A DNA stretch of 64,000 nucleotides from Camelus dromedarius (Eukaryota). Shown here in pieces: positions 11,201 to 64,000 of this stretch (position 1 is the stretch's first letter; every line of letters begins with the position of its first letter). The notes under the pieces were generated by a model. That model ran no database searches. It saw nothing but the letters and a program-made list of their open reading frames with translations, and was not told where the DNA came from. The DNA is taken from contig NC_087451.1 of NCBI RefSeq assembly GCF_036321535.1, positions 15,376,001 to 15,440,000 of the forward strand, in the 5' to 3' direction. The translations under genes were made by a program, and so were the position numbers.

Positions 11201-11746
11201 AAAAGGGCCTGGACTCATTTCAGAGGAGAAATGGTTTAAATGCAAGTGGAAAAAAAATATTGAATAATAACACGCATACTGTGGGCCACTTCTTTATTTT
11301 CATATTTTTGAGCATAAGAAAAGTAAAATCTATTTTTATTACTTACAAAGAGTCCTGAAAGCACCATTAGATGATATTTTAGCTAAAGAGAAAACAGAAG
11401 TTTTGCATTAGTATGAGATGCTAATTTATGATTGCATTTAGATCTACCCACCATTTGAGGGAGTTAGAAGTTAAAGTAAACAGCTGTATCTCTAGTTGAT
11501 CTCTGCATATTTTAATCCAAATATGGTAAAGGGCAGGGCTACAGAAGGGAGTGTCCCTATAATAAACAGGGCTCAGAACTTGTAACAGAAAATCAAAATA
11601 CACTCCACTCAAGAGAACCCTGTGCTTTGCACTTTGGTTAAAGGTCTCATTTAGATTTAAATTCCTAAACTGCATAAGAAATTAGGTTTTCTTTGATCTT
11701 CTCCTTTTTGAGTTGCAGAATTCAGATAAAACTACTACTCGATAAA

Positions 11747-26996
<15,250 letters not shown>

Positions 26997-35921: not shown

Positions 35922-37973
35922 CTGGGGTAAGAAGAGGAACGACTGTCAGCTGCAGAACAGGGCTTGGGGCCAACACAGCTGGGCCCGCCCAAGGCAGACG
36001 GGGCCGGGAAAGAGGCCCCACCAGGGGTGGACTGAGTCGGACCTCTGCTCGTGTCACCGTGGCCCTGGGCCCGGCTTTATCTGAGGAAAGGGTGCCAAGC
36101 TCGCTGATCTGCTATCACCAGGGATTGTGAGCACCAGAGACAAGAAGTGTGAAGGTCCTGCACAATCAGCTCACAAATCCTTGCACCAGTTGGGGAGTCC
36201 GTTCCCTGAAGATTCCAGGAAGTGACAATTTTTAGAACTAATTTGGCCTGGAATTGAGAAGAAGCCAGAAGTTTTTCCAGCTTCTCCATCCTACCCTCAG
36301 TCAAGACCCTGCCAGTTGAGGCTTACTGCTCTGGCCAGACAGGGGGTGATGCAAGACACCAGCCTTCCCTAGAGGCCCATGGGACCCACTCCCTAGGTCA
36401 GCAGTCCTCACTCTGCTGCAAATGAGGGTCTCTAGGGAACACTGAAAAATCCCACACCACCGACAGATTCATACAAATCTCTGCAGGGGGACCCAGGCAT
36501 CTGCATCTAGTAGAGCTTCCTGAGCGGTTCCATAGTGCAGGGAGGATGAAGAGCTCACTAGTTCCCGACAGCTGAGCCCGGGTGCCCTAGGACGGGGGCA
36601 GAACTTCCCGGGGCACCAACTCAAGGTCCAGGAAGAGGGTCCTGTCAGGAAGGACAGCGTCAGAGCCCTGAGCTCACGTGACCCTTGGAGTTCCCATCTC
36701 ATCTCACCTGGAGCCTTGTCTCTACAGCCCAGGCAGGGAGCTCCTGTGGAAAGGGTAGGTCTCCCCTTCCTGCACCCCCAGCCTAGAGGGCCCAGGGACA
36801 GGGTTTGTGTCTCAAGTATGGCTGCACCCTCCGCTCCCAGCACAGTGGCCAACTTGGGCAGCATCCAGAAAGGTTTCCAAAGAACACTGAGTGCAGGAGA
36901 GAAGGGGCCAGGAAGGGTGCAGGCAACTCCCCAAGCCTGGCCACGGGGAGGGGGTGGGGGACACGTTATTTCTCTAGAGAACCAGGGGGGCGTGGGGCCA
37001 TGCTCCATGCAGGAGGCTTCGCCCCGGGGCCCTCCCCAGGGAAAGCACACACCTCAGAGTCCTTGGAGAAAGCCCACTTGCAACCACAAATCTGACTTCT
37101 CAAACCCCCAGGAAACCGTGTCCTTGGGGTGGGCAGGGGATGGGGGGCACACAATTCCTCCTGTCAAAGGTGTGCTCCATCCCCTCCTCCTCCCACAAGA
37201 GAATGAAAGGGTCCCTTGTGGGCCCAGCCCTGAGCTCTGGGCCAGGACCCAAGGCCCTCAGGGCAGCGCCTCCGGCCCCCCACCCCCGCCAGCTGCCCTG
37301 AGGCTGGCACAGCTGCCATTGCTCAACAGTCCCCCACCGTCACCTCTCAGCGCCCTTCCAGCAGCCTCCCAGGAGCCACAGTCCTCTCCCAGAGTTTGTG
37401 ATATGGAGGCCAAGGACGGGCTTTGCTAAGCCGTGACTCCCGCCCCAACCTGAGTCTTGACCTTGAAATCGGACCAAGCTGTGGTCCCGGCCGCTTAGAG
37501 AGATGTGAGCCCACCCAGCTGAGGCTTCACCAAGGCTCCGGGTTAACTTGAGTTCCTCAGCCACGATGCAAGGGCACAAAGGGCCATGAGCAGCCGCACA
37601 CTCTGCTAGGGACCTGGCTCAAGGTTTCCACCTAACAGACAGGCTGGGGTCTCCCCAGAGTCAGGGAGCAGCAGCCCATTGGCTCTGGATCCAGAGCAGG
37701 CCTTCTGGGGCTCCTGTCCTCATGAGAGGCTCCTGTCCCTGAGGCTCAGACACTCAGCCTCCGTTTGGATGCCTTGCCACACAGGAATCCTCAGCCTTAA
37801 GGCTCCTCCACTGGGGCTCCGGCAAGGAGGTCCCAGGACAGGAGAGAAACAGTGTTAGGAACTGAAGTCAAGAAGATAGGTTCACATGCTGCTTCTCATG
37901 GCTCTGCGCAGTCAGCCACTCAGCAGGGCCCCTAGGGGAGCATGCCTACAACCCCCATCCCAGTCTTGTCCAC

Positions 37974-38254
37974 CTTGGCCTTGTCCATCTTGGCAGCCAG
38001 CTGCAGTGGCGTCAAGCCATCATTGTTCCACGTGGTCTCCAGCTCCCAGTTGCCACTCCTCCGCAGGATCATGTCGTACATGCGCTTGACGAAGTCATTC
38101 TGCGTCTTGAAGTCCTCGGCCACCGTCAGCAGCGCGTGGAGGATGTTGTTTCCCTGTGAATCCTGGGAGGTGATGTCCATCTGCTCGTTCTCCATCAGCA
38201 GCTGCATGATCTCGGACTGGTTGGTACAGGCTGCCAGGGCCAGGGGTGTCTCAC
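37974..38254 (-). pseudogene. TRPV3: TRPV3 exon 8 (281 nt), acceptor mutated AG>AC
   Basis: [42 protein letters not shown]...[14 protein letters not shown]; the intron ends cccctac. Confidence 0.95.
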
Positions 38255-39801
38255 GTAGGGGAGGGGGAGCACGGAGACTCGGTTCTTTCACGGACCAGAA
38301 CGGTGACCCCCAAGTCCTAGAACTGAGGCTTCTCCAGACCATTTCCACAGGGATGGGAGACTGGAGCTGCATCACTGCAATAAACTCCTAGATGGTCTCC
38401 CTGCTATCACCCTGGCCTCCAACATGATTCTTAGAACAACAGCCAGACTGATCCTGCTAACAAATAAGGCTCACCTTACCCAGAATAAAAGCTCAGATTC
38501 CAATAACAGCACACAAGGCCCAACATCTGACATCATCTACTCCTCTCCCCATCATTCACTCCCTCCAGCCACAATGGCCTCTTCGTTTTCCTCAAGCACA
38601 CACAAGCATTTTCATATCTCAGGGCCTTTGCACAGTCTGTTCCCACTGCCCGTAGTGCTGTTTCTTAGATACCTGCATCATTTACTCTCTCACCACCTTC
38701 AAGTCTTTGCTCAAATGTCACCTTTTCAATGAATCACCCTAAGTGTTCTATTTAAAGTTGAAACCCACCTCCTTCCTGCCCCAGAACTCCTGATTCCCCT
38801 TTCCTACTTTACTTTCTAGTTTTTGAATAGCATTTATTGTTTTTTTTAACATATTACAGAACATTCTTATTTATTATGTTTATTATTGATGGTCTCTCTC
38901 CCATGTAGAATGTAAGTTCCACAAGAGCAAACATCTCAGTTTTGTTCACAGATTTATTTCTAATACCTAGAACAAAACGTGGTGTATACAGTAAACAATA
39001 AAGGTTTGTTAAGAAAAGAGAAGACAGGTGACTCCCTCAGGGTCACACATGGTAGCCGTGGACGGACCCAGGCCTGGACAGCATGCCTTCTGCTGCTGCT
39101 CCCCAGTCTCCCCCGGTATCCTCTCTTCATCCCACCTGACAAATGTTCCCAACACAGGCTCCAACCAGGTCAGACGCCAGGCAATGGACTGGACAAGACC
39201 CTGTCCTCAAGGCCACTCAGACCCATCTAGCCCTGCTGACTAAAAACCACCCAGAAAACAGGTCAGTGATCGTCCATCAGGGGCTGGGCTGGGAAGAGGA
39301 ACTGACTACAAGGTTGTACCAGGAAATTTTTGAGTGTGATAAAGCTGTTCCCTGTCCTGATCACAGTGGTGGTTACATGACTGTATGCATTTGTGGAAAT
39401 GAACAGAATTGTCTATTAAAGTGGGTGAACTTCACTATATAGAAATCACACATTAAAAAAAATTTTTTTCCACCCAAAACGGCCTAACTCCAATTGCTTT
39501 TGGACTCCCTAAGGTGTCAGCCAGGGAATTCTCATCCTCACTTTTGACTACCTGTTGGCAGTTCTGAGAGGCACTGGACACGGAAAAGACGCCAGAGCTG
39601 GCCACCGGGATGCCTACATCAGCTGCTTACTACACTGGGGCAAGTCACATCCCTTCTCAGGACCTGTCGGCTGCTTTGTAAACTAGAGCTCTCCTTTGGT
39701 CTCCCTCCCAGGTCTCTGTTCCCTAAGGGCTGCTCAGCTGAAAGTCTGGGTGCCCACTAAGACCACCAGGTGACACTCCCAGAATGCCGGCTCCCCCATC
39801 A

Positions 39802-40245
<444 letters not shown>

Positions 40246-41179: not shown

Positions 41180-42155
41180 AGCATTTTTAAAGTCTGGAAA
41201 ATTGTTTATAACTGACCTTCTGGCAGGGAAAACTTTCTGAAGCAAAATCCAAAATGCAGAAACCATAAAGAAAAAAATGGACAGATTGACAGTCTGCTTA
41301 CATAAAAATTAAAAGTTTCTCTATTTCAAAAGATATCTTAAAGGACAAGCAATAGGCTGGAGGAAATATCTGAGATGTATGAAAGAGGCAATGTGTGTTT
41401 CAAAGTCCACAGTAGATGAGGAGCTCCTACAAATCAATAAAAAAACAACCTAAAAGAGAACTGAGAGAAGATTAGCAAGAAGCACCTCACAGAGAAGAAG
41501 ACACACCCAGCCAATACAGAAAGTGCAAGGTGTTTGGAATCACTGGTGATCAGCAAGATGAAGATTTGAACCTGAGGAGTTAACACTTTTCACCTATTGG
41601 ATTGACGGTATGTATCTTGGCAATACAATACTGGCAAGGATGCATGCTTTTGTACTCTTGTGTGGGGGGAGAGTAAATTAGTACTTTTTGCAGGCAAACT
41701 TGGGGCAATAGCCATTGTAATTTTAAATATGCATGTCCTGAACCCAGAGAATCCAGTTCAAAGTGCTTTCCTAAAACATGTATGCACGGTGCAAGGGTTA
41801 CAGACAAGACTATGCACTGCAACGCTGTCATCGCAAAACACTGTGAAGCACGTGGATGTCTGCCATCGACAGGGGAATGTGAAATCACCCCCTTGCAGCC
41901 GTCTTCAGACTAAGCAGGTGAAAAGGAGGCAGACTTTTATATTCTGATATGAGAAGGCATTTAAAACATATATTTAATTCCCCCAAATCAAATTGTAGAA
42001 CAATACAAACAGCACAATACATAGGTAGATAAGTGAATAAATAAAACTGTTCCTATGTGCACATACACACTTATGTCGAAAGTCTAATATAGTCATCATC
42101 TCTGGAAGGGAGAGTGGGGAACAGGTGAAGGTTTTCTGGTTTTGTTTTTACTTAA
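41180..42155 (+). mobile_element. L1ME-type fragment in TRPV3 intron 6
   Basis: aaaaaaatggacagattgac...aaaattaaaagtttctct...aaatcaataaaaaaacaacc L1 ORF2/3'UTR pattern; ends abruptly at the SINE. Confidence 0.75.
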
Positions 42156-42159
42156 TATA

Positions 42160-42305
42160 GGGGAGAGGGTATAGCTCAAGATAGAGCACATGCTTAGCAT
42201 GCACGAGGTCCTGGGTTCAATCCCCAGTACCTCCACTGAAAAACCAAATCAACCTAATTACCTCCCCCCCTGCAAAAATAAATAAATAGTTTTAAAAAAA
42301 GAAAT
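42160..42305 (+). mobile_element. tRNA-derived SINE, camelid-type
   Basis: ggggagagggtatagctcaag...cttagcatgcacgaggtcctgggttcaatccccagtacctcc...aacctaattacctcccccc plus an A-rich tail. Pol III A and B boxes present; resembles the recalled camelid SINE consensus. Confidence 0.85.
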
Positions 42306-42309
42306 AAGT

Positions 42310-44370
42310 GTAAAAAAATTCCCCATCAGTGCAGATGCATGAAAACCACAGAGAGACCAAAGCTGATGCAAAACTCTAATGCACTTTTAGCCTGCTCACT
42401 TTATAGCACTTTAAGTTCTATACATGTCTGCTGACTTGGAGTTGTAAACTTTGAAACTCTCAGCATAGGTCCATGACAGTCTCTGAGTTTGGGATGTTGA
42501 ACTCATTTGTTTTTTACAGATGTGTGTTTGCAGTTTTTACTAGTCTGAAATTAGAAGCATCTCTACACTTCATGACTAATAGTTGTTAGCCTCATTTTGA
42601 GTGAGGACTTCTGGTCACCACATATTGTAAGGTACTGCTTATAATATTGGTTTCAAGGGCTTCTTTTAGTGTTTCAGATAGACCGAGACCAGCCTCTGGG
42701 GGGCATATGGAGAATGTATATAACAGCCTTAGGTTTTTTGCCTGGTATGTGAGTGTTTTTAAAAAGAATATATATTTATAGGTAGATTTTTAAAATTTGG
42801 TGCTTTTCTATAGAATACATTTATTTTAAATATATAGAAAGCTTGAGATGCCTCATATAGGGTGGCAACTCTATTTATGTGTGGGATGTTTCATTGAGAG
42901 ATTATTTTCAGTCCCCTTCTTTTGTGAGCTGTGCTGTGAACTACAAACCGTGCATGTGTATGAAAGGTTAAGAGCCCGGGTAGCTGGGTGGGGTGCCGTG
43001 CTGTTAGCAGACGACGAAGGCAGTGTTCCACACCGGGTGCACGCCGTCAGCTCTGTAGAAGATGCCATCTTCATGGAGTCAGCTCATGGTCCACTTTTTC
43101 TTGAAGCCAGGTAACAGTTCCCACAACCAGTGGGTTCGCCTTGTTGGAGTTTTTCCAACTAGAAAAACTAAAAACCTAAGTTCTTTTCTTCCCTAACTTT
43201 TTTTTTTTTAATGAAACATTGCCTGTTGGAAGAACTAACTTGCAAGGTAGAATGAACCTGTGTTATCACTTTGCTTTGTAAAATAATAATTATATAAGAA
43301 GTGACTTTTGTGTTTTTTTGGCTAGAAACTGGGGAGGATAAGAAATTAGAGTGAGTGCTGTGTGCCGTTTCACTATGGTGATAAGCATGGAGCACTCTGC
43401 TTATTTCTTAGGGGGGTACTGAGTGCCCCTTTTATGATAACTAATCTGATTGTCCACTCTGACTATTACTGAGACAAAGTAGTTTTGTACAGTTTATATT
43501 CCTGTACAGTTTATACTCTTTTGCATATGTCAGTGTCTTGGCCTTTTAATGATGCCTGACTCTTGCTTCAAATCTGTTTAATATAGTTGTAAGATAAACT
43601 AGACAGTCTCTCTAAGCTCTTAATTCTGCAAGTTTTCTACATCGCCTCAATTGTGCTCACTTAAGTAAAATGTCAGTGACACTTGAATAAAATGTTCCAA
43701 CCTTTGCTTTAAAGCTTTATCCTCTTCGTGATAAGCTGTCATACTTGGTACCCTTGAGGGTGCTTAGCAGAGTTATTAACTGCACATGCTCACAAACTCA
43801 GCTTGTGGTTCAGGCTGTCCCTGTTCTTGTCATGCATAGTATGGCTTCTTTTATGTCATTAACTTTTGGTCCATCGTGTTACATTATGTCCTTTAGTTGG
43901 TACCATCATCACTGCCTGTCTGACTAATACCAGGGTTTGTTTTGGTTTGGTTTGTTTGTTTTTTTCTTCTTCTTTCTTTAATCAGCAATAACCAAATTAA
44001 ATGCGAACTGGTAAACCTTCCCCAGTCCCCCTCTGGGATTTTTTGGGTAAATTTTTATGGGGCTGAATGTTTCCAAAGTTGATTTTAAGCAATGCTCTTA
44101 GAAAAGTATTGGCAGTTGTCACTTAACTGCTTACAAGATAGCTTTTGGTTTGTTCCCGGGGGCAGAAGTTGCACATCAAGTTCCATGAGATTGACTCTCA
44201 AAATTGTGAAGTCTCAGTCTTACCTCTCATTTTGAAAGACCATGGTGGCATTAAAAAGTGGCAGGTTGATTTGTCTAAGTTCTCCATTTTCCATGCGAAG
44301 AAAATGTCTAACATTTTACATGTTGCTTCCTCCCAAATGTAACAAATTGTAAAGACATTTGTCTTTATTA
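42310..44370 (+). other. Unidentified AT/U-rich, repeat-free block resembling a terminal exon / 3'UTR from another locus
   Basis: Strong acceptor tttgttttttacag at 42506-42519, U-rich tracts, AATAAA at 43686-43691 followed by GT-rich sequence; no long ORF. Confidence 0.4.
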
Positions 44371-44389
44371 ATGTCTATAGTATGCCTTT

Positions 44390-44960
44390 AAAAAATTTTT
44401 TTAATAGACTTTATTCTTTTAGAGCAGTTCACAACAGGATTGAGCAGAAAATACAGAGTTCACACATAGCCCTCCCCACCCACACATATATACTCCCCTT
44501 CCCTCAACCTCCCTCATCATGTGGCATATTTGGTTCAATCGATGAACCCACATGGGCACATTATTATCAACCAAAGTCCATAGTTTACATTAGGGTTCAC
44601 TCTTGATGTTGTGCATTCTATGGGCTTTGACAAATGTATAAGGACATGTAGCCACCACTATAGTATCATACAGAATAATTACATTGCCCTAGAAATCCCT
44701 TGTGCTCCATCTGTTCATTCCTCTCTTCCCCGCTCTCTCCAAACCCCTGGAAACTATGATCTTTTTATTGTTTCTGTAGCTGTGCCTTTTCCAGAATGTC
44801 GTTTGGTTGGAATCGTAGTTTGTAGCCTTTTCAGGCCGGCTTCTTTCATTTAGTAATATGTCTTTTAAGTTTCTTCTATGTCTTTCATGCTTGATAGATC
44901 TTTTTCTTTTTTTTTTTTTAACTGCACATATATTCTTTAATTTACATATATGTACTGTTC
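44390..44960 (-). mobile_element. L1MA/MB 3' end, antisense
   Basis: ttttttaatagactttattcttttagagcagtt...acattattatcaaccaaagtccatagtttacattagggttcactcttg. Confidence 0.8.
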
Positions 44961-45687
44961 ATTGCTTCTAAGAATGTTTAGAGCACTGAATTGCCCAGTA
45001 GCATGTGTCTGAGATTGGACCTTGTCGGTGGGACTCAAATTCTGGGAAAGGCTTCCAGGAGCTGGGGTTCTGGAGAGATGGTGGTCTCAGGGCCTGGTTG
45101 TCTGAGATCACTTGGGATCCTGCCCTGTCTGCAGGAAAGTGAGGTCCTGGAGTCTCTGAGGGAGCCTGGGGCCCCCAGAGAAACCTGTCTGACTGCTTCT
45201 CTGCCCCACCTGGTTTCCTGCCCAGCGCCTGGGGTGTAGCTGCCTCACCTCCGCAGCCTTCTCCAGGGGGCCCAGTGGATGGGGGTGGGTCTGTGAGACC
45301 CCAGAAGCTACTGGAGGCCCTGAGGGCCTTCTCCTGCTCTGGGGGTGGCGGGCAGGGGCAGCCAGAAAAGGGAGCCCAGGGCTGGGTTGGGGCATCTGTC
45401 CCTTTTCTGCCCCCCACCCCGGGTTCGCCCCACTCTGGGCTGGAGGTCAGAGATCCAAGCCCAGGACTCACACACAGGCATCCCATCCTGGGCAGTCCTT
45501 CCCTGGGATTGGTCCTTTCTGCCTCCCACCCCACCTCTTCCACAACCCACTGGGGCCCTTGGGGCTGTGGTGGCGTAGGGGGTGATGGACAGGGCAAGAG
45601 GAAAGAATGAAGATGGGGACTGGGCCAGGTGATGGGATGCTCCACCTGGGCCAGCTAATTTCCTGCCTCTCTTTTGTGTTCCCTCAG

Positions 45688-45891
45688 CCACCAATGACCT
45701 GATCGAGCAACCCATCAAGGTGACCGAGTGGCAACAGATGTACACCTATGACTTGGGCATCCACTCGGGGGCCAACACCTGCGTGCCCTCAGTCAGCAGC
45801 AAGGGCATCGTGGAGGAGGACAAGGCCTGTGGGCGCCAGTACACGCTCAAGAAGACCACCACCTGCACCCAGGCGGTGCCCCAGAGCCAAG
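45688..45891 (+). pseudogene. JUP: Junction plakoglobin exon 2 fragment with flanking intron sequence (genomic duplicate)
   Basis: LIEQPIKVTEWQQMYTYDLGIHSGANTCVPSVSSKGIVEEDKACGRQYTLKKTTTCTQAVPQSQG vs recalled JUP MEVMNLMEQPIKVTEWQQTYTYDSGIHSGANTCVPSVSSKG...; cag acceptor and gt donor kept, native start deleted. Confidence 0.95.
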
Positions 45892-46722
45892 GTCGGGGCT
45901 CCTGGGGACTCTTCTGTGGGAATATTCCAGCAGAAGTCCAGGCTGGGCCCTGGATGGAGTCAGCGTCAAAAGAGACAGACTTTAAGGGGCTCCCAGACTG
46001 AGCAGGGAGGCGCAGCTACTTCCAGGCGCCACCATCTGGGAGGGAGGCAGATTACACTTCCATGAATGTATTGTATGGAGAGGAGGCATAGACCCTCTCC
46101 TCCATGCGTGGAGTAAAGCAGGGGGAGTGATGGGTGACTGTGTTACAGAAGAGGAAGTCAAGGAAGGCCTCTCTGAGGAGGTGACACTGAGCAGTGCTGA
46201 ATGGAGTAAAGGACCTGGTCCCCCAAACATCTGGGGGAAGAGTATTCCAGGCAGAGGAAACAGCCTGTGTAAAGGCTTCATCCTACTCCATGGTAGAGAA
46301 ATCTCCCTTCTGCCCAGAATTTGTGCACATCTCTCTCACAGCACTCTCTCCTTTCATCTTGCTTTGTGGGCTTGTTAGGCACATATCTTCATTCTTATCC
46401 TATAGGTGCCTTGAAGGCAGCATCTGCATTTGGTCCAGCTCAGTGTCCCTCCCTGGGCTTTGCACAGTTTCTGGCACACACTAGGTGGTCGTTAAGGGCA
46501 GAAAGCATGGCTGGACAGATGGACGGATAGGCTGTTTTGCTGGTGGATGGATGAATGGACTGAAGGATGAGAGGAGAAGCTAATGGGTGTTTGTAGCCCG
46601 CAAGTCCCATCCAGACTCTCAGGCCTTGCTCCTTTCCTCTGATTCCTGGTTTCCCTTTCTCCTACATCTCCCTTCTCCCTCAGCTTAGTCCCCTCTAGAA
46701 ACCCCTTTCTCCCTGTTCTAAG

Positions 46723-49212
46723 GGCTGTGCCTGGCTTTTGTGGAAAGTGACTTCAACATAACAAAGGCAAATGAAAATACAGATGGCAGCTTTGACTATG
46801 GCATCTTCCAGATCAACAGCCATGACTGGTGCAGAAATTACCAGAGCCACACGGAAAACCCTTGTCACGTGGACTGTCAAGCTCTGGCCAGAGCCCCGGG
46901 ATGGGAGAGGTGAGAGAGGTGACAAGGCTCTATGCACAGGACTTCCCTTCCTACGCACAGCCTGGCAATGGCCCCTGGTGGGGTGGCTCAAGGAGTCAGG
47001 GAATCCCTTTACTGAGCAGAGGGTTTGACTAGTGTCCCTAATTGCGCATCCATAGCATTTGCCACAGTATTCCGCAGGCTCCAGATAGTCTCTGCACAGC
47101 CAGCTGCAGTAGAGCAGCAGCAGCAGCCAGCATTTTTCAAGAGTGGATTATGTCCTCAGCACTTTACATGCATAGCTCATCTCATCCAACCTGCCATGTA
47201 GTACAGACTAGTAAGATTCCCACTTTACAGATGAGCAAACTGAGGCTCATAGAACCAGTGCTGAATGCCAAACTGGTGGCCCTGAAAGCTCAGCTCTCAC
47301 CACCAAGTAGTCTAACCAAAGGCCAAGGATAAACTCCCCACTCAGAGTTGATCCAGGAGGCTCCACTGGTCCATTACTCTGTCCCTTATCTCCTCCTTTG
47401 TTCACCTGAAGAGCCTCCCTCCTAAGCATGACTTTACCTTGGTCTCTGTGCTTTCCCTAGAAACCTCCACACCTTGGGGTGAACCACCATCTACTCTGGC
47501 TAGGAAGTATGGTAGTAAACCAGCCCAAATCTCAGGCTTCCTGTCCCTCCTACCCCCACCCCCGGCCACCCCCCAACCTCCAGCAGCCATTGTATGGATG
47601 CCCCAGTGGGCCTCTAGGAGGGAGGCCCTGCCCCATCTGGAAGTACTCAGCCTCCGGGCGGCACACACCTGTGCGGGGAGAGCCAGTGACTGCCTCAGTC
47701 TTCGGGACTGTCCCCTGTGCTCTCATCAGTACTCTCCTTCTTCCTTTCAGGACTGCTGAGCCCCAACCTTCCCTCAATCATCAACTGTGCAAAAAAGCTT
47801 GTGTCTGGAGCAGGGGGCATGAAGAACTGGTGAGGAGGACCCTGTGGGACTAAGCTAGTGGGCAGGGTCTTAAGAAAGATGTGCTGACAGAGAAAGGGAC
47901 ACTAGGCCAGGCCTAGAAGTCTTCTACAGTCTAGAAAGATGTGGGCTAGTGGCAGGGCTTGGAACGCCGGGATCTGGCTCTTCCTCTGACTCTGTGTTAA
48001 ACCAAACTCTTTTGGTTGCAGTAACAGAACAGCCTGAGCTAGCTGAAGGAGATTTACTCTGAGAGGACAAGGGGTCTTACTGAGCTCACACAAGGGGTGC
48101 AGGTTGGGCCTCAGGAAGAGCATGGAAGCAGGGCTGGAAACTGTCAGCAAGCTTTCCTTGGCAGGTTTCTGCTTCTCTTGCTGTATTTGCTGTATGACTT
48201 CCTCTGCAGACCAGCTTTCTCTGCTCTACTGCCCACAGGACCATGTCTACCCTGAATCTATGGGCTAATGTTCCCAAGCAACCACACAGAGCCGGGCTAG
48301 GCTCAGTCCCAGTCCAAGTGCTTGAGGTAGAGAATCTGTTGGGTTCAGCTCAGATCCCGTGTCCCCTCTCGGTTCAGTCAGCCGTAGGCCTGGGAGCAGT
48401 GAAGCAATAAAAACCTGGCTGCCACAGGGCCCTCTCTCCATAACTGGCTGCAACATTTTCTAGAATAAGTGTGTTGTTCATCATCTGGGCAGACACCCCA
48501 GCTGTCGGTTTACCAGCGGTAGATGTTGGGATGGTTACTTAACTTCTCTGACCTTCAGACTAGATGTATAACTAATATTAGTGGCTGCCTCTATGGGAAA
48601 CTGGAAAACAGAAAGAGTTAAGTGCCTTGGATTCTCTAAAAACACAGGCAAAAGAAGGGACATTGATGATTATTATGGAAAGAAAGTCAATGGTTGCCTC
48701 TGGGTGTTTTGTTTGTTTGTTTTAGTAACTCTCAGGCCTGTAACACAGTCCTCTTCTCCTTCAGAGGGAGATAAGGATTTGAAAATGTGGAAGCAAATAA
48801 TAATAATAAATTTTTAAAAGCCTGTGGTTGGGGGTATAGAGCTCATGGTGGAGTGCATCCTTAGGATGCAGGAGGTCCTGTGTTCAATCCTCAGTACATC
48901 TATTAAAAAAGAAAAAAAAAAAGAAATATAGAAGCGAACTGAGTGGGGAAGAGGGCGAACAATATGGACAAGGGAATTTAAGGGAAGAATCAGAGGGGCC
49001 AGGGGAGGACAGATTAGACTGCTGGGAATGAAGGGGATGCTGGGCGTTGCTCTGCGTGGAAGCTTCACTAAGTTCTGGGTCATGTGGGCAGGGAAGCAGC
49101 TGGTCAGGTGGAAGCAAGAGCCAGTCTTCTTTCTCTCCACAGGGTAAAATGCAGGCTGCACTGTGCAGGCCGGCCACTCTCCTGCTGGAGGACAGGATGC
49201 CACGTGGGATGA
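46723..49212 (+). pseudogene. LYZL6: LYZL6 (sperm lysozyme-like 6), 5'-truncated copy: three coding exons, signal-peptide exon missing
   Basis: 46723-46881 LCLAFVESDFNITKANENTDGSFDYGIFQINSHDWCRNYQSHTENPCHVDCQ (donor CT, not GT); 47751-47829 LLSPNLPSIINCAKKLVSGAGGMKNW; 49143-49212 VKCRLHCAGRPLSCWRTGCHVG*; AATAAA at 49329-49334. Confidence 0.92.
48830..48923 (+). mobile_element. Older/degenerate copy of the tRNA-derived SINE
   Basis: gggggtatagagctcatggtggagtgcatccttaggatgcaggaggtcctgtgttcaatcctcagtacatc plus an A tail. Confidence 0.75.
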
Positions 49213-50984
49213 GGCAGGGGACAGGCCTGTGGTGGAGTCACTCCAGAATTCCTCTCCTCACTTCAGAATTCTTCATTTCTTCTTCCTCTTGCCTCCACTT
49301 CCTGTTATCTTCTTCCCTTCCATTTACAAATAAAACTGATCAGAGCCCCAGAAATCATTGGTGTTCTAGGACTTCCTCCTTGTTCCCATCCAGGCCCAGG
49401 CCCCTGGTTCCCTGACTGTCATTTGTAAACCAAGAAGACCCTAATGAAGAAGTTTCTGTATTTTTGGAATTATTAAGTCATTCCTTGTGCAAAGACTGTG
49501 TTAACTTATTCATTATTGATTCCACATGTATTTGCATACCTAATAGAGTAGGAGTGTGCTAGGGACTAGAAGGTAAAGCATAACTATTGTTCATGAGGCA
49601 TTCATAATCTAGCTGGGGAAGCAGAGACATACATGCATAATGGAGACAATGAATAGATATATACAATGAATACAGTAGTAATAAAATCTATAATTATTGG
49701 TTTGAAACAGTATCAGGATCTAAGTAATTCCTCCAAAGCCAACTATTTTTGAAGTAAAAGCTCAGAAGTAGGCCATGGGTGGGGCTAAGGGTCTGGTATG
49801 TTGAGGTGGAGAAGGGATGGGAGGGGAGAAATGGTGTCAGGTGCCAGGTTCCAGTGATTTGGGGGTACTTCGGGAGAATAGGCTAGAATCTAGATGATTA
49901 AAAAAGCTTCAGGATCTGCTTTGCTTGGAAGGTGCTGATGTGGATTAAAACCTGCTTAAGGACACTACAAAGACAGGAAAGGGACAGTTGGAGGAATGCC
50001 CTGCACAGAGCCACCATCAGTCCTGTCTGACTAAACTGGGGTTTTATCTTGAGCCACTTATAACCCTACTCTGAGCTTTAACTCCTTCAGCTATAAAATG
50101 AGTGATTTGACTACTCAATGATTCCCAGACTTTTGGATTTCACAGACCAGTAAAATGTAAAAGGAAAAAAAATTAAGACTGTGAAAGTTTCCAACTTTTT
50201 ATTTTAATGCCTAAGTATTAATCAAAACAGCTATCCTTTATTACTATCTTTTCACAAGATAATTTTTAGCATCAAATTGAAGGAAAGCCATACTTGTAGG
50301 ATAATACAAAGGAATAGATTTTGTTCTGTGGAAAAAATTAAACCTTGATTATATTGCTCTTTTCCCATTTTGCTGAGAACTGGTAAAAACTTCATCACAG
50401 CCCAGTATGGGTCTGAAGAGCATTGTTTGGAAACCTCAAGGGGTCTGTTTTATTTCCCCAGTAACATAGCCGACTTTTAGGATGCCTAGAGCAGCTTCTC
50501 GGGCACCAGAAGCTCCAGTGTTGGTGCCCTAATTGGACCAATTTCTTCCAAATTTATCTCTCCTCACCTTGCCTCCAACTTCCCACATCATCTGACCTCT
50601 ACCAGCTCACATACATAATTACCAAAATCACGAAGGAAAGTCAGGGAATTCTTTTTAAGGACTTCATGTTAGACAGTTGATAGCTTTAATGAGATATACC
50701 CTGATATATTTAAAACTCATGCAAACATTCTTAGGTCAAAGGATTTCATCTTTAGTGGTCACATTCCACAAAGAGTTGGGAAGTTTAAATTTTTAAAGTT
50801 CTGTGGGTAGCTAGTGGTAACTACCTAGTACTCTAGTCTTCTGTGGGAGTTTGAAAATGAAGCCAGCTGCTATAAAACATCGGCACCACTTGATCCTGTA
50901 AACTCACCCTTTGGACTGACTCTACCCTAAAAATACACTTGAATAGAAGCAGTAAATTCAAGGCTGTGGGGCTGCCTCAGGGAA

Positions 50985-51400
50985 ACTAAAGGCGGAGACC
51001 CGGCAGGAGTGGGAGGGGTGAAGGAGCGGTCAGAGCACCGCTGTCGCCCCACCTCCGCCAAGCTGGCCCAGCCCCTCTCACATCCGCCCCCCGGGTGGTG
51101 GGAGGCAAGCGGTGCTGTGCGCAGGCGCTACCGGCGGAGACCCGTCCCCACCGCGTGGGGCGTCCCGAAGGTTGGCGGGGCATGAGGCGACGGTCTCCAG
51201 CTTCCCCTCCTCCACCCAGCTGCGCCCGCTGAGGAGGCACGAGCCCCCGCCAGGCCCCCACACCCCAGCACCGCCGGACCATGTACTCAGCCCACAGGCC
51301 CCTGATGCCCCCGTCTGGCGCGGCCTCCCGTGGCCTGGGCATGTTCGGTCAGTAGTGCCTGGGCCCTGGGACTGCAGGGGTCAAGGGGTTGGGGCACTGA
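50985..51400. promoter_or_regulatory. Orphan CpG island with an NRF1-type motif
   Basis: CpG-dense block; TGCGCAGGCGC at 51117-51127; 12-bp direct repeat ggcggagacccg; no coding exon recognised. Confidence 0.65.
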
Positions 51401-51659
51401 GTGCGGAGTAATGGTGATGGGGCATGAGTAAGAGAATGGTGGAGGCAGAGTAAAGGGGAAAGTTACAGCGCTCCGCTGGGCCAAGTGGTTAGTGGTGGCA
51501 GGTGGGAGTGTAGCGGAGTGATGGGAGTGCAGAGTAGGGAGTGACTGGGGACAGCTGTGGTGTTTAGGTGTGGGGTGGAACAGGTCTGTTGCCATTGGAG
51601 GTGAGGGGTGCAAAGTAGCTGGCTTCATAGCATGAATTACAATAGGAGCAGGGTGAGAT

Positions 51660-52070
51660 TGTTGCAGAAAAGTGTGTGACAGCTCGGTGTTACAGCTCAG
51701 TTGTGACAGCAACCTGGATCCAGGCAGGAGACCGAGCAGCACTGGGAGAGTTGGAGAATTCAGATTTATTAAGCTAGCAGGTCCAGAGGAGTTAACACTC
51801 CAAGCTCTGGACCCCGTCTGTAGGTTTACACAGGCTTTCATAGGCTGCCAGTTTACATTTTGCAACATCGTATGCAAATAAGGTATAACAAAAGTTGATT
51901 AATTAGGAACAAGCTTTGTAGAAATGGACCAATCAGGAGGGAGAGAAATAACCAATCAGGAGTGAGCTCCATGCAAATGAAGTACTATAAATGGACCAGT
52001 CAGGAGTTAGCTCAGGGAACCAATAGAATTTTAGGGGTAAGTTCCAATTTCCTAGAAGTTAACCATTTCA
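51660..52070 (-). mobile_element. ERV solo LTR (U3 end uncertain)
   Basis: The minus strand ends ...cttttctgcaaca, with AATAAA (plus-strand tttatt at 51766-51771) and TATA-like tatgaaag upstream. U3 has two octamers and repeated ctcctgattgg boxes. Confidence 0.8.
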
Positions 52071-52200
52071 GAGGCAAAAAGTGAGATAAAGCCGCTGGGC
52101 CAGGGAACCTGATGGTGCTGGCAGGAGAGTAGTGTCCCTGCTTGGGGGTCCTGTAGGGTGTATTCCCTTCCTGCTGCCCTAACTCGTGCTCATTTTGTAG

Positions 52201-52300
52201 GTCAGCTACTTTTCTTGGAAGCAATGTGGCCAAGGGGAGGAAGAATGTCTCAGATTTCAGCTTTGAGGAGGAGGAGTTTAGATTGCCAGAACTGGACTAG
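52201..52300 (+). pseudogene. RDM1: RDM1 last exon remnant with a 2-nt frameshift
   Basis: VSYFSWKQCGQGEEECL/DFSFEEEEFRLPELD* vs recalled human ...WKQYGQEEEGYLSDFSLEEEEFRLPELD*. Branch point ctaac and ttttgtag acceptor intact; AATAAA at 52525-52530. Confidence 0.9.
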
Positions 52301-52561
52301 CACTTTTGCATTTCCCGGAAGGCCAGGCCCTGTGACTTCCTTGGGAAAGTCTGGAGAGTCTGGGGACATTCTGGTCTGCAGCCCAAATCCTGCCTTGTTG
52401 TGCTGGGGGCCAGGCCAGGGTTGGAGAGAGGGTCCGGTAGGAGGTAAGAGTCACCTTTGCTGGGGGAAGGATGGCTTGGGCCTTGGGAAAGAGCCTGACT
52501 GTGGTTGCATGTCCACCCTGACCTAATAAAGGTGGTGTCACTAAAGGTGTGTCATAAATAA

Positions 52562-61886
<9,325 letters not shown>

Positions 61887-62214
61887 GTAAGTTAATTAGT
61901 TAGTCATTTATTTATGAGTTCTTAGTTCTGTTATCTATAAAGTAGTTAAGGGGTTCAAGTTAGATAATCTCTACAATTTTTTCCAGCAATAAAATCCCAT
62001 CATTCTTTAAGTCTGTGTAGGGCCCCAGCCCATCTCTAGCATCAAATATCTCCTATTCATTTTTAATTTTTAAATTTGTATAGACAAAATATAGATAGAA
62101 AAACACCTTTAAGTTGTAGAGGAAAAGTGGTAATGAGGTCTGAGCAGTTACAGACACCCATATGAACCTTATTATGTAAGTGTTCATACACCATCATCCA
62201 CTTATATTTAGCTT

Positions 62215-62410
62215 ATGGCCCTTGGATCAAATCCAGCCTATGATTCATATTATACAGCACACAAGATAAGAATGATGTTTAAAGGGCTATAAGTGAAAAA
62301 AAAAAAGAGGAAAAAACAAAGGAAAACACACGACAGAGACTGTGTGTGGCCTGCACAGCCTCACGTACTCACTGTGTGGCCTTCACAGAAAAGGTGTGAA
62401 AAAGGTGGTT
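62215..62410. mobile_element. MER58-like DNA transposon fragment
   Basis: gacagagactgtgtgtggcctgcacagcct...ctgtgtggccttcacagaaaagg. Confidence 0.6.
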
Positions 62411-64000
62411 TAGTAGAATGAGAGGAATTAAAGTTAAGCTCAAATTATCACCTACAGGACAAGAAAATATAGAACACTCACATTAATATGAATGCCATTA
62501 ACTCATAATTTAAATTTAAACTAAATTAACATTTAAATATTAAATATTTAAGCAGATGAATTATGTAAACAATACTGTCCAGAACATATCAAGTTACCAA
62601 GAGAACAGACTGGTATTAAGGATTCAATGCAGGAATTGTGATACCAATGTTAAAAATGTTTAAGATGATGGTTAAGGTGGTATAGTTATAAATATTTACA
62701 TGAAATAAGCATATTAGAAATGCCCTTAACTTCACTAGTTACAAAATAAAAAATTCTTCAGCCTTGTTATACAAGGAAAGAAATGCTTGCATAATATTTT
62801 TGTTTATTTAGAGATAAGGAGATACTGTGTTCTCTGCTATAAAAGATCAGTTTTTATCTTTTGTCCGTGGCATCCAGAGCTGTGTATGTCATTAATCCTT
62901 ACTAAGCTAATAATGATGCTCTTTAGCAATGAGATTCTTCTTGCAAATATAGAAGGCTAAGGGAAGTGGGCATAAGGAGCCTCACATGACCCTAAAAATA
63001 GTCCTTTTAACTATCAAACCATCCAAACCTTAAGGGGCAACCACTTTTGTATTAGTCTTCTTGGGTCCCTCTGTCATCTGGGCTCCAAATCTTAGAAACA
63101 CAGTTTGGAGAAAATTAAATGAGATAATTGCTTAGTGGATTAGGCCATTAATTACTTCTACTATGAAATACTTTCTTAGCTGATTATTTCATGTTTGCAC
63201 AAGTTATTCTCACTCATTTTAAAAAATGCCAGTCAGTAAAAAAGATTAAGCTGAGCACTGTGCCTAGTGTTGTAAACACAAAGATGGGTAAGACAGAGTT
63301 CCTTCTAGCAACTCCTGATCTCACAGGGAAAATAAACGTAAGCTCAGACCATAATGAACAAGCACTGAGTGGCTGGCAAAGTGCTGTAGAGGCATAGAAA
63401 AGGGAGCTGTGAAGTAATAGACCTATGTTTCTTCTAAAACAGTCATTTTCCTCCTGTTCACTCCCCAGCTAATTGTTTATTTTTAAAACTATCTGACTTT
63501 GCTTTATGTCAATGCATTGGCTTTAAACATGATAGACAATGTGCATGAGCAGATCTAGTCCATACATTTAAGGAGTTTATACTCAGAGGAAATGGGCTGC
63601 GAGAATAGCTACATAAGAAAAAAAAGAGGAGGGGGCAATGAGAGCTCTAAGTTGGTTTTGGAGCTCAGAAGAGGAAAGAAAGGCTTCAAACTGGATCAGG
63701 GAAAATGATAGAGCAGTGCTGTTTGAACAGGACTTTAAAGGACCATTGTATGTTATCAGGCAGACATCTTGGGAAGAATGAATTTGCAAAAAGAAGGTAG
63801 GAGAGAGGCAAAACACAGGAAACATGCTTTGAGAACCTGCAGAGTACAAGTAGGAAGAGTAGGAGATTAGGACCAGATCATCTAGGGCTTTGAAGGCCAC
63901 GCTGAGGGTAACACGCCAGGCTGCCCCATTCCCACAGCAGTGCTGTCGGACAGACTCAAGCCTGCAGCAGAATCAGTCACTTGGAGGGCTTGTTAAGGCA

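What the first reader, a model, noticed from the sequence alone, without database searches (positions are those of the whole stretch)
42310..64000. Mosaic duplicon built around LRRC37: unknown UTR + JUP + LYZL6 + CpG island + LTR + RDM1 + LRRC37
Seen: within about 11 kb there are pieces of at least four genes, all with their own introns and splice sites and all on the plus strand. Most are incomplete or damaged; only LRRC37 is open. Established: LYZL6 and RDM1 are neighbours in human 17q12, LRRC37 is a core duplicon at primate chr17 rearrangement breakpoints, and JUP and TRPV3 lie far away on human chr17. Inference: an independent, non-primate LRRC37-seeded mosaic sits at an evolutionary breakpoint, suggesting reuse of the same core element in another mammalian order.
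Basis: partly seen in the sequence, partly recalled or inferred. Interest (0 to 1): 0.78.

Follow-up and report, generated by a model that had tools for sequence, protein, structure and literature searches.

The report
Camel copy of an LRRC37 duplication family
This camel region is one decayed copy of a gene block (LYZL6, RDM1, LRRC37) that multiplied along one chromosome in the camel family, independently of the well-known LRRC37 expansion in primates.

Summary
On the plus strand lie a JUP first-coding-exon copy, LYZL6 exons 2-4, the RDM1 promoter and last exon, and the start of an open but shortened LRRC37. Three Camelus assemblies carry the same 21 kb, so it is not a misassembly.

The interpretation needs one correction. 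LYZL6-RDM1-LRRC37 is not a mosaic. RDM1 ends about 0.4-0.6 kb upstream of LRRC37 in goat, dolphin, a bat and an anteater, so that order is ancestral.

The independent expansion is real:
- The dromedary has at least four more RDM1-LRRC37 copies on the same chromosome, each beside a different gene. One of them also carries LYZL6.
- All camelid copies form one clade against goat and dolphin.
- Copies are 86-91% identical, whereas camel-alpaca orthologs are 94-95%. The copying therefore predates the camel-alpaca split.

Alpaca has the ortholog of this short LRRC37, but its flank differs upstream of window position about 51,690, which marks a lineage-specific breakpoint. Alpaca also has the JUP-LYZL6 chimera, at an unknown position on that chromosome.

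Still open: the "UTR" block and the "LTR" are unidentified, expression is untested, and whether LRRC37 itself drives the copying is inference. Other first-stage notes on this genome had flagged the short exon 1 and a second block.

The parts
42150..42320 (+). tRNA-derived SINE at the right end of the TRPV3 remnant
   Evidence: Rfam tRNA match at 42165-42235, 49.4 bits. Many copies occur in all fetched camelid loci.
42321..44400 (.).
   Evidence: No long ORF on either strand. No Rfam match. No similarity to any fetched locus.
44960..46110 (+). JUP-derived genomic fragment: end of intron 1, first coding exon (45687-45893, ATG lost), start of intron 2
   Evidence: P0482 'junction plakoglobin', 86%. 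The same derived residues occur in alpaca P0495. Splice sites are retained.
46111..49212 (+). LYZL6 copy that starts inside intron 1: exons 2-4 only, exon 2 donor GT>CT
   Evidence: Homology to dromedary L007 begins at window 46111 = L007:4885, 345 bp after L007's LYZL6 exon 1. Pfam Lys. Exon 4 matches the Alpaca_Lyzl6B type.
50790..51658 (+). RDM1 promoter / CpG island and first-exon region
   Evidence: 85-89% identical to the region upstream of the RDM1 exons in L002, L005, L006 and L007. CpG observed/expected is 0.61.
51659..52150 (.). 0.49-kb insert that replaces about 5.3 kb holding the RDM1 middle exons; its left edge is the camel/alpaca breakpoint
   Evidence: Absent from the paralogs. 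Shared with the alpaca ortholog from 51694 onward. Holds CCAAT-like and TATAAA-like motifs. LTR identity is not verified.
52201..52297 (+). RDM1 last exon remnant with a 1-bp frameshift
   Evidence: The same two-frame pattern is seen in C. ferus and in alpaca L011.
52712..64000 (+). 5' part of the short LRRC37 gene: exon 1 (52712-52942, signal peptide joined to the LRR N-cap; about 3.25 kb of repeat region missing) and LRR exons 55273-55344 and 61816-61887. The gene runs off the window.
   Evidence: P0140 (554 aa) has LRR_8 and LRRC37AB_C but no PF15779.

Best explanation
The stretch is one old, decayed copy of a camelid-specific segmental-duplication family. The family's unit is the ancestral placental gene row LYZL6 > RDM1 > LRRC37. 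The part shared by all copies is the 3' end of RDM1 plus LRRC37; in most copies the unit runs about 35 kb, from the RDM1 promoter to the LRRC37 3' end.

Shown:
- RDM1 sits directly upstream of LRRC37 in goat, dolphin, a bat and an anteater.
- The dromedary has at least four more copies, each beside a different gene. One of them carries LYZL6 as well.
- All camelid copies form one clade.
- The copies are older than the camel-alpaca split.

History of this copy:
- It was joined in LYZL6 intron 1 to a captured genomic JUP piece. The phases allow an in-frame JUP-LYZL6 exon chimera.
- It lost the RDM1 middle exons, with a 0.49-kb filler in their place.
- It lost the exon-1 repeat region of LRRC37. 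A 554-aa reading frame remains in a database protein model; only its first three exons lie in the window.
- On its left it abuts a TRPV3 remnant next to ASPA.
- In alpaca the orthologous short LRRC37 has a different upstream flank.

Inferred:
- The copies spread by duplicative transposition, and the junctions were repaired by end joining or template switching that captured small fragments.
- Later rearrangements reused the copy edges.
For: - Ancestral order. In goat, a called RDM1 gene (DSRM_RDM1 domain) ends 476 bp before LRRC37. The RDM1 last exon lies 0.4-0.6 kb upstream of LRRC37 in goat, dolphin, tamandua and bat. Felid LRRC37 models carry the RRM_1 and DSRM_RDM1 domains. A published figure legend lists RDM1 and Lrrc37 among the neighbours of Lyzl6 (PMC3141428).
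- Copies. L005, L006 and L007 each hold RDM1 exons plus LRRC37. L007 also holds LYZL6 exons 1-4. L006 has a tandem second LRRC37.
- Clade and order. The tree gives 100/100 support for a camelid clade, with the window copy branching first at 97/97.
- Age. Paralogs are 86-91% identical. Orthologs are 94.4% (alpaca L002 vs dromedary L006) and 95.3% (alpaca L011 vs window).
- Not an artefact. The stretch is 99.7% colinear in CamDro3 and about 99% in C. ferus.
- JUP-LYZL6 chimera. An alpaca RefSeq model shares the derived residues of the window copy.
- Published precedent. Alpaca was reported to have four Lyzl6 genes (PMC3141428).
Against: - Only 10-kb flanks of five camelid paralogs were seen. No whole-genome self-alignment was possible, so the copy number and the 'shared by most blocks' criterion are incomplete.
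- The alpaca flank difference rests on one alpaca assembly.
- The origin of the 42321-44400 block is unknown.
- No reads were laid, so neither expression nor depth is shown.
- dN/dS between the camel and alpaca short LRRC37 is about 1.3 on 101 codons. The open frame may therefore not be under constraint.
Confidence: 0.8

Rival explanations
1. It is simply the ancestral single-copy LYZL6-RDM1-LRRC37 locus with decayed genes. No duplication is involved.
For: The gene order is ancestral. A 2013 paper reports one LRRC37 copy in cow and in dog (PMC3530683).
Against: Four further RDM1-LRRC37 copies lie on the same dromedary chromosome at 16.95, 52.1 and 57.1 Mb, including one tandem pair. They are 86-91% identical to the window copy. 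An intact LYZL6-RDM1-LRRC37 row exists at L007. The goat single-copy locus lies outside the camelid clade.
Confidence: 0.03
2. The adjacency is a misassembly of collapsed or chimeric paralogs.
For: The region is paralog-rich, and that kind of region is prone to assembly errors.
Against: The same order, the same junctions and the same lesions are found in the window's assembly, in CamDro3 and in a short-read C. ferus contig. The JUP-LYZL6 junction is also transcribed in silico in an alpaca RefSeq model.
Confidence: 0.03
3. The block did multiply in camelids, but LRRC37 is a passenger. The spread is driven by RDM1's CpG promoter, by flanking repeats or by a fragile site, and the resemblance to the primate core duplicon is coincidental.
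For: Every fetched copy carries at least the RDM1 last exon, and all but this copy and its alpaca ortholog carry most of RDM1. The left edge of three copies falls at the RDM1 CpG island. Alpaca models splice RDM1 exons onto LRRC37 exons (P0469).
Against: LRRC37 is the element common to the primate and camelid expansions. Annotation also shows many LRRC37 loci in jaguar and elephant. In humans RDM1 is no longer next to LRRC37, yet LRRC37 still expanded (PMC3530683).
Confidence: 0.14

Closest known systems
Primate LRRC37 core duplicon on human chromosome 17 (Giannuzzi et al. 2013, PMC3530683; Bekpen et al. 2012, PMC3371713)
   Same: - The same gene family.
- Many intrachromosomal copies on the chromosome-17 homolog.
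- Copies juxtaposed to unrelated genes, giving fusion gene models (RDM1-LRRC37 in alpaca, SMTNL2-LRRC37 in Bactrian camel).
- Copies with truncated structure.
- Copies at rearrangement junctions.
   Different: - A different order (Camelidae), with an independent origin shown by the tree.
- The unit carries RDM1 and sometimes LYZL6.
- The copies are old (9-14% diverged), not recent.
- Genome-wide 'core' status, expression and selection are not shown here.
Lyzl6 gene duplications in alpaca, dog and hyrax (Irwin et al. 2011, PMC3141428)
   Same: Alpaca was reported with four Lyzl6 genes. The window's LYZL6 remnant and the L007 copy are of the Alpaca_Lyzl6B type.
   Different: That paper treated Lyzl6 alone. 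It did not link the copies to RDM1-LRRC37 blocks or to chimeric exons.
Ancestral mammalian LRRC37 locus (cow chr19:45 Mb, dog chr9:10 Mb; PMC3530683)
   Same: Goat chr19:44.8 Mb shows RDM1 followed directly by LRRC37, the same layout as each camelid copy.
   Different: It is single copy there. The window copy is a displaced and internally deleted derivative.

Membership tests
LRRC37 gene family | LRR N-cap followed by 72-bp LRR exons homologous to LRRC37 proteins | tested here: met
   139 family hits; residues 24-77 align to LRRC37 proteins (named). LRR_8 on exon 3.
LRRC37 gene family | Large repetitive exon-1 domain (Pfam PF15779) | tested here: not met
   About 3.25 kb is missing relative to L007 and other paralogs. 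P0140 has no PF15779 match. This is a deletion variant, and it is shared with alpaca P0433.
LRRC37 gene family | C-terminal LRRC37AB_C domain and transmembrane segment | tested here: met
   P0140 matches at E 2e-58. This part lies outside the window and comes from a database model.
Core duplicon (segment shared by most intrachromosomal duplication blocks of a chromosome) | Several dispersed copies on one chromosome | tested here: met
   Window copy plus L005, L006 (with a tandem neighbour) and L007 on one dromedary chromosome.
Core duplicon (segment shared by most intrachromosomal duplication blocks of a chromosome) | The core is present in the majority of duplication blocks, flanked by younger, copy-specific duplicated segments | not testable with these tools
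   This needs a whole-genome self-alignment. Only the window copy shows added fragments (JUP, TRPV3 remnant).
Core duplicon (segment shared by most intrachromosomal duplication blocks of a chromosome) | Copies coincide with evolutionary rearrangement breakpoints | tested here: inconclusive
   The camel and alpaca orthologs differ upstream of window 51659-51693. The copies sit beside UNC45-like, WD40, leprecan-like and WAP genes. No genome-wide test was made.
LYZL6 (C-type lysozyme-like 6) | Four coding exons of a C-type lysozyme with conserved intron positions | tested here: not met
   Exons 2-4 are present (Pfam Lys). Exon 1 is absent and the exon 2 donor is mutated. It is a gene fragment.
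JUP (junction plakoglobin) | N-terminal exon plus armadillo repeats | tested here: not met
   Only the first coding exon is present, without its ATG. It is a fragment.
RDM1 | RRM and DSRM_RDM1 coding exons | tested here: not met
   Only the promoter region and a frameshifted last exon are present.
Processed pseudogene / retrocopy | Intronless copy with a poly(A) tail | tested here: not met
   Every piece keeps its introns and splice sites.

The most novel reading that the evidence does not exclude
The RDM1-LRRC37 segment may be a recurrently used duplication core across mammalian orders. Primates and camelids are shown or published. Jaguar and elephant are suggested by many annotated loci. In camelids its copies would mark the intrachromosomal rearrangement breakpoints of the chromosome-17 homolog and would spawn fusion genes (JUP-LYZL6, RDM1-LRRC37, SMTNL2-LRRC37).
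Probability: 0.4. Interest if true: 0.75.

Novelty: new member of a known kind. Interest (0 to 1): 0.6.

Why it matters
Core duplicons have been treated as a largely primate, and especially ape, phenomenon. An independent expansion of the same gene block on the same ancestral chromosome in camelids has a clear implication. It suggests the locus is intrinsically prone to copying, or that its testis-type genes are repeatedly favoured. That makes the question of why certain segments seed duplication testable by comparison across orders. It also bears on camelid genome annotation. Several models labelled 'LYZL6', 'LRRC37B' and 'smoothelin-like' are chimeras created by these copies.

Tried and rejected
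- The RNA run search found reproductive-tract RNA runs holding about 0.3 of the words of 52150-52950, which is about the share that exon 1 makes up. Without laying the reads this is only a hint of expression.
- Pfam gave nothing for the JUP exon, LYZL6 exons 3-4, or LRRC37 exons 1-2 taken alone.
- The protein Atlas search on the JUP exon returned only bacterial chance hits.
- Findings look-ups by sequence and by the word 'plakoglobin' were blank.
- Rfam found only the SINE's tRNA head and a sub-threshold U6-like match.
- Paper searches found no report of LRRC37 copies in camelids, nor of LYZL6 together with LRRC37.
- The look-up of P0004 failed because only the longest isoform is on record.
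- The joined, spliced models of the window genes were not searched. Exons were searched one by one by reference.
- I could not fetch the camel JUP, P3H4 or TRPV1 loci. The idea that the 'UTR' block comes from JUP intron 1, from the P3H4 3' UTR or from the TRPV1 3' UTR therefore stays untested.
Full report
**What is there**

- A JUP first-coding-exon copy at 45687-45893, flanked by AG and GT. Its start ATG is lost.
- LYZL6 exon 2 (about 46723-46881), exon 3 (about 47751-47830) and exon 4 (about 49143-49212, with a stop).
- A CpG-rich region at about 50790-51658, followed by a 0.49-kb insert.
- The last exon of RDM1 (about 52201-52297), with a 1-bp frameshift.
- LRRC37 exon 1 (52712-52942) and two 72-bp LRR exons (55273-55344 and 61816-61887).

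Tool support for each identity:
- LYZL6 exon 2 matches Pfam Lys at E 1e-12, and LRRC37 exon 3 matches LRR_8.
- The JUP piece is 86-89% identical to short proteins, one named 'junction plakoglobin' by its source. It also aligns to the beta-catenin N-terminus.
- LRRC37 exon 1 finds 139 family members. It is 100% identical to dromedary KAB1265017.1 'LRRC37B'.

Three lesions or gaps were confirmed:
- The LYZL6 exon 2 donor reads CT instead of GT.
- LYZL6 exon 1 is absent.
- The RDM1 middle exons are absent.

**Not an assembly artefact**

The dromedary assembly CamDro3 (CM016642.2, 11.416-11.439 Mb) is colinear with window 42711-64000 at 99.7%. An independent short-read Camelus ferus contig carries the same JUP exon, LYZL6 exons, frameshifted RDM1 exon and LRRC37 exon 1 at about 99%. 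The structure therefore predates the dromedary/Bactrian split.

**LYZL6, RDM1 and LRRC37 are ancestral neighbours**

- In goat (chr19, 44.78 Mb; a 2013 paper places the single-copy cow locus at chr19:45 Mb, PMC3530683), a called RDM1 gene with the DSRM_RDM1 domain ends 476 bp before LRRC37, on the same strand.
- The RDM1 last exon lies 0.4-0.6 kb upstream of the LRRC37 start in goat, dolphin, tamandua and a bat.
- Felid LRRC37 models include the RRM_1 and DSRM_RDM1 domains.
- Irwin et al. 2011 list RDM1 and Lrrc37 among the genes of the conserved Lyzl6 neighbourhood (PMC3141428).
- Dromedary L007 holds a full LYZL6 (exons 1-4), then RDM1, then LRRC37.

**The block did multiply in camelids**

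On one dromedary chromosome (CM070325.1) I fetched further copies:
- L005 at 52.1 Mb, next to an UNC45-like gene.
- L006 at 16.95 Mb, inside a WD40 gene and with a tandem second LRRC37.
- L007 at 57.1 Mb, inside a leprecan/P3H4-like gene model.

All of them carry RDM1 exons directly upstream of LRRC37. Annotation lists about ten LRRC37 gene loci in alpaca and several in the Bactrian camel. Some 'smoothelin-like 2' protein models of Bactrian and wild camel fall in the same 90%-identity clusters as LRRC37 proteins.

A maximum-likelihood tree on 3.3 kb (LRR N-cap, intron, LRR exon 2) puts all camelid copies in one clade against goat plus dolphin, with 100/100 support. The window copy branches first, with 97/97 support.

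Paralogs are 86-91% identical. Alpaca L002 and dromedary L006 are 94.4% identical over 49 kb, which is the ortholog level. The copying is therefore camelid-specific and roughly twice as old as the camel-alpaca split. Putting absolute dates on this would need the published split time, which I did not check here.

The shared unit runs from the RDM1 CpG island to the LRRC37 3' end, about 35 kb.

**History of this copy**

- Homology to L007 starts at window 46111, inside LYZL6 intron 1 and 345 bp past exon 1. To the left lies the JUP piece, so the JUP exon sits where LYZL6 exon 1 should be.
- Both introns are phase 1, which allows an in-frame chimera. CamDro3 annotates a 152-aa 'Lys' product starting in the JUP exon.
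- Alpaca RefSeq has a 100-aa 'lysozyme-like protein 6' that is the JUP exon spliced to LYZL6 exons 3-4, with the same derived residues as the window. This junction therefore predates the camel-alpaca split.
- About 5.3 kb of RDM1 is replaced by a 0.49-kb insert.
- About 3.25 kb of the LRRC37 exon-1 repeats is missing.
- A 554-aa database protein starts with exactly the window's three exons. It keeps the LRRs, LRRC37AB_C and a transmembrane segment, but has no PF15779.

**A breakpoint between camel and alpaca**

Alpaca L011 (6.36 Mb) is the ortholog of the short LRRC37. It is 95.3% identical over window 51694-64000, with the same short exon 1 and the same RDM1 frameshift. Upstream of L011:8981 lies a WAP-gene region. 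There is no CpG island, LYZL6 or JUP within 9 kb. The junction in the window is at 51659-51693, with a short duplicated motif. Which species is derived is unknown.

**Limits**

- The 42321-44400 block and the 'LTR' are unidentified.
- dN/dS between the camel and alpaca short LRRC37 is about 1.3 on 101 codons, so constraint is not shown.
- Whether LRRC37 rather than RDM1 or the locus itself drives the copying is inference.
- No paper in the held library describes LRRC37 copies in camelids.

Noticed in passing
L002 and alpaca protein P0469: An alpaca RefSeq model splices an RDM1 first exon and RDM1 middle exons directly onto LRRC37 LRR exons, skipping LRRC37 exon 1. This is an RDM1-promoter-driven fusion model. 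Felid LRRC37 models also carry RDM1 domains.
   Followed up: partly
cluster lists (Camelus bactrianus and C. ferus): Protein models named 'smoothelin-like protein 2' fall in the same 90%-identity clusters as LRRC37 proteins. One 2706-aa LRRC37 model also carries a CH domain. An LRRC37 copy therefore seems to be fused to, or to lie beside, SMTNL2.
   Followed up: no
L004:11091-11379 (Miniopterus natalensis): The LRR N-cap and the next two LRR exons lie head to tail without introns in this bat LRRC37 copy, although an RDM1 last exon lies upstream. It looks like intron loss or a partly processed copy.
   Followed up: no
window 56345-60671: A 4.3-kb stretch of LRRC37 intron is present in the window copy and in L005 but absent from L002, L006 and L007. 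It is an indel that may help order the copies.
   Followed up: no
window 51900-52000: The 0.49-kb insert holds three or four CCAAT-like boxes and a TATAAA about 720 bp upstream of the short LRRC37 ATG. It could serve as that gene's promoter.
   Followed up: no
L011:12523-12632 (alpaca): In the alpaca ortholog the donor of LRR exon 2 is changed, and the RefSeq model skips that exon. The short LRRC37 may be decaying in alpaca.
   Followed up: partly
hit lists: Jaguar has at least 14 annotated LRRC37-like loci, many on unplaced contigs. African elephant has several on one chromosome. LRRC37 expansion may be recurrent in mammals.
   Followed up: no
window 11678-24316 (+) and 37935-40245 (-): ASPA exons read open on the + strand. 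TRPV3 ankyrin-repeat exons lie on the - strand, converging on ASPA as in human.
   Followed up: partly
window 49447-49553 (-): A weak U6 snRNA-like match (22 bits, below the family threshold), probably a decayed U6 pseudogene.
   Followed up: no
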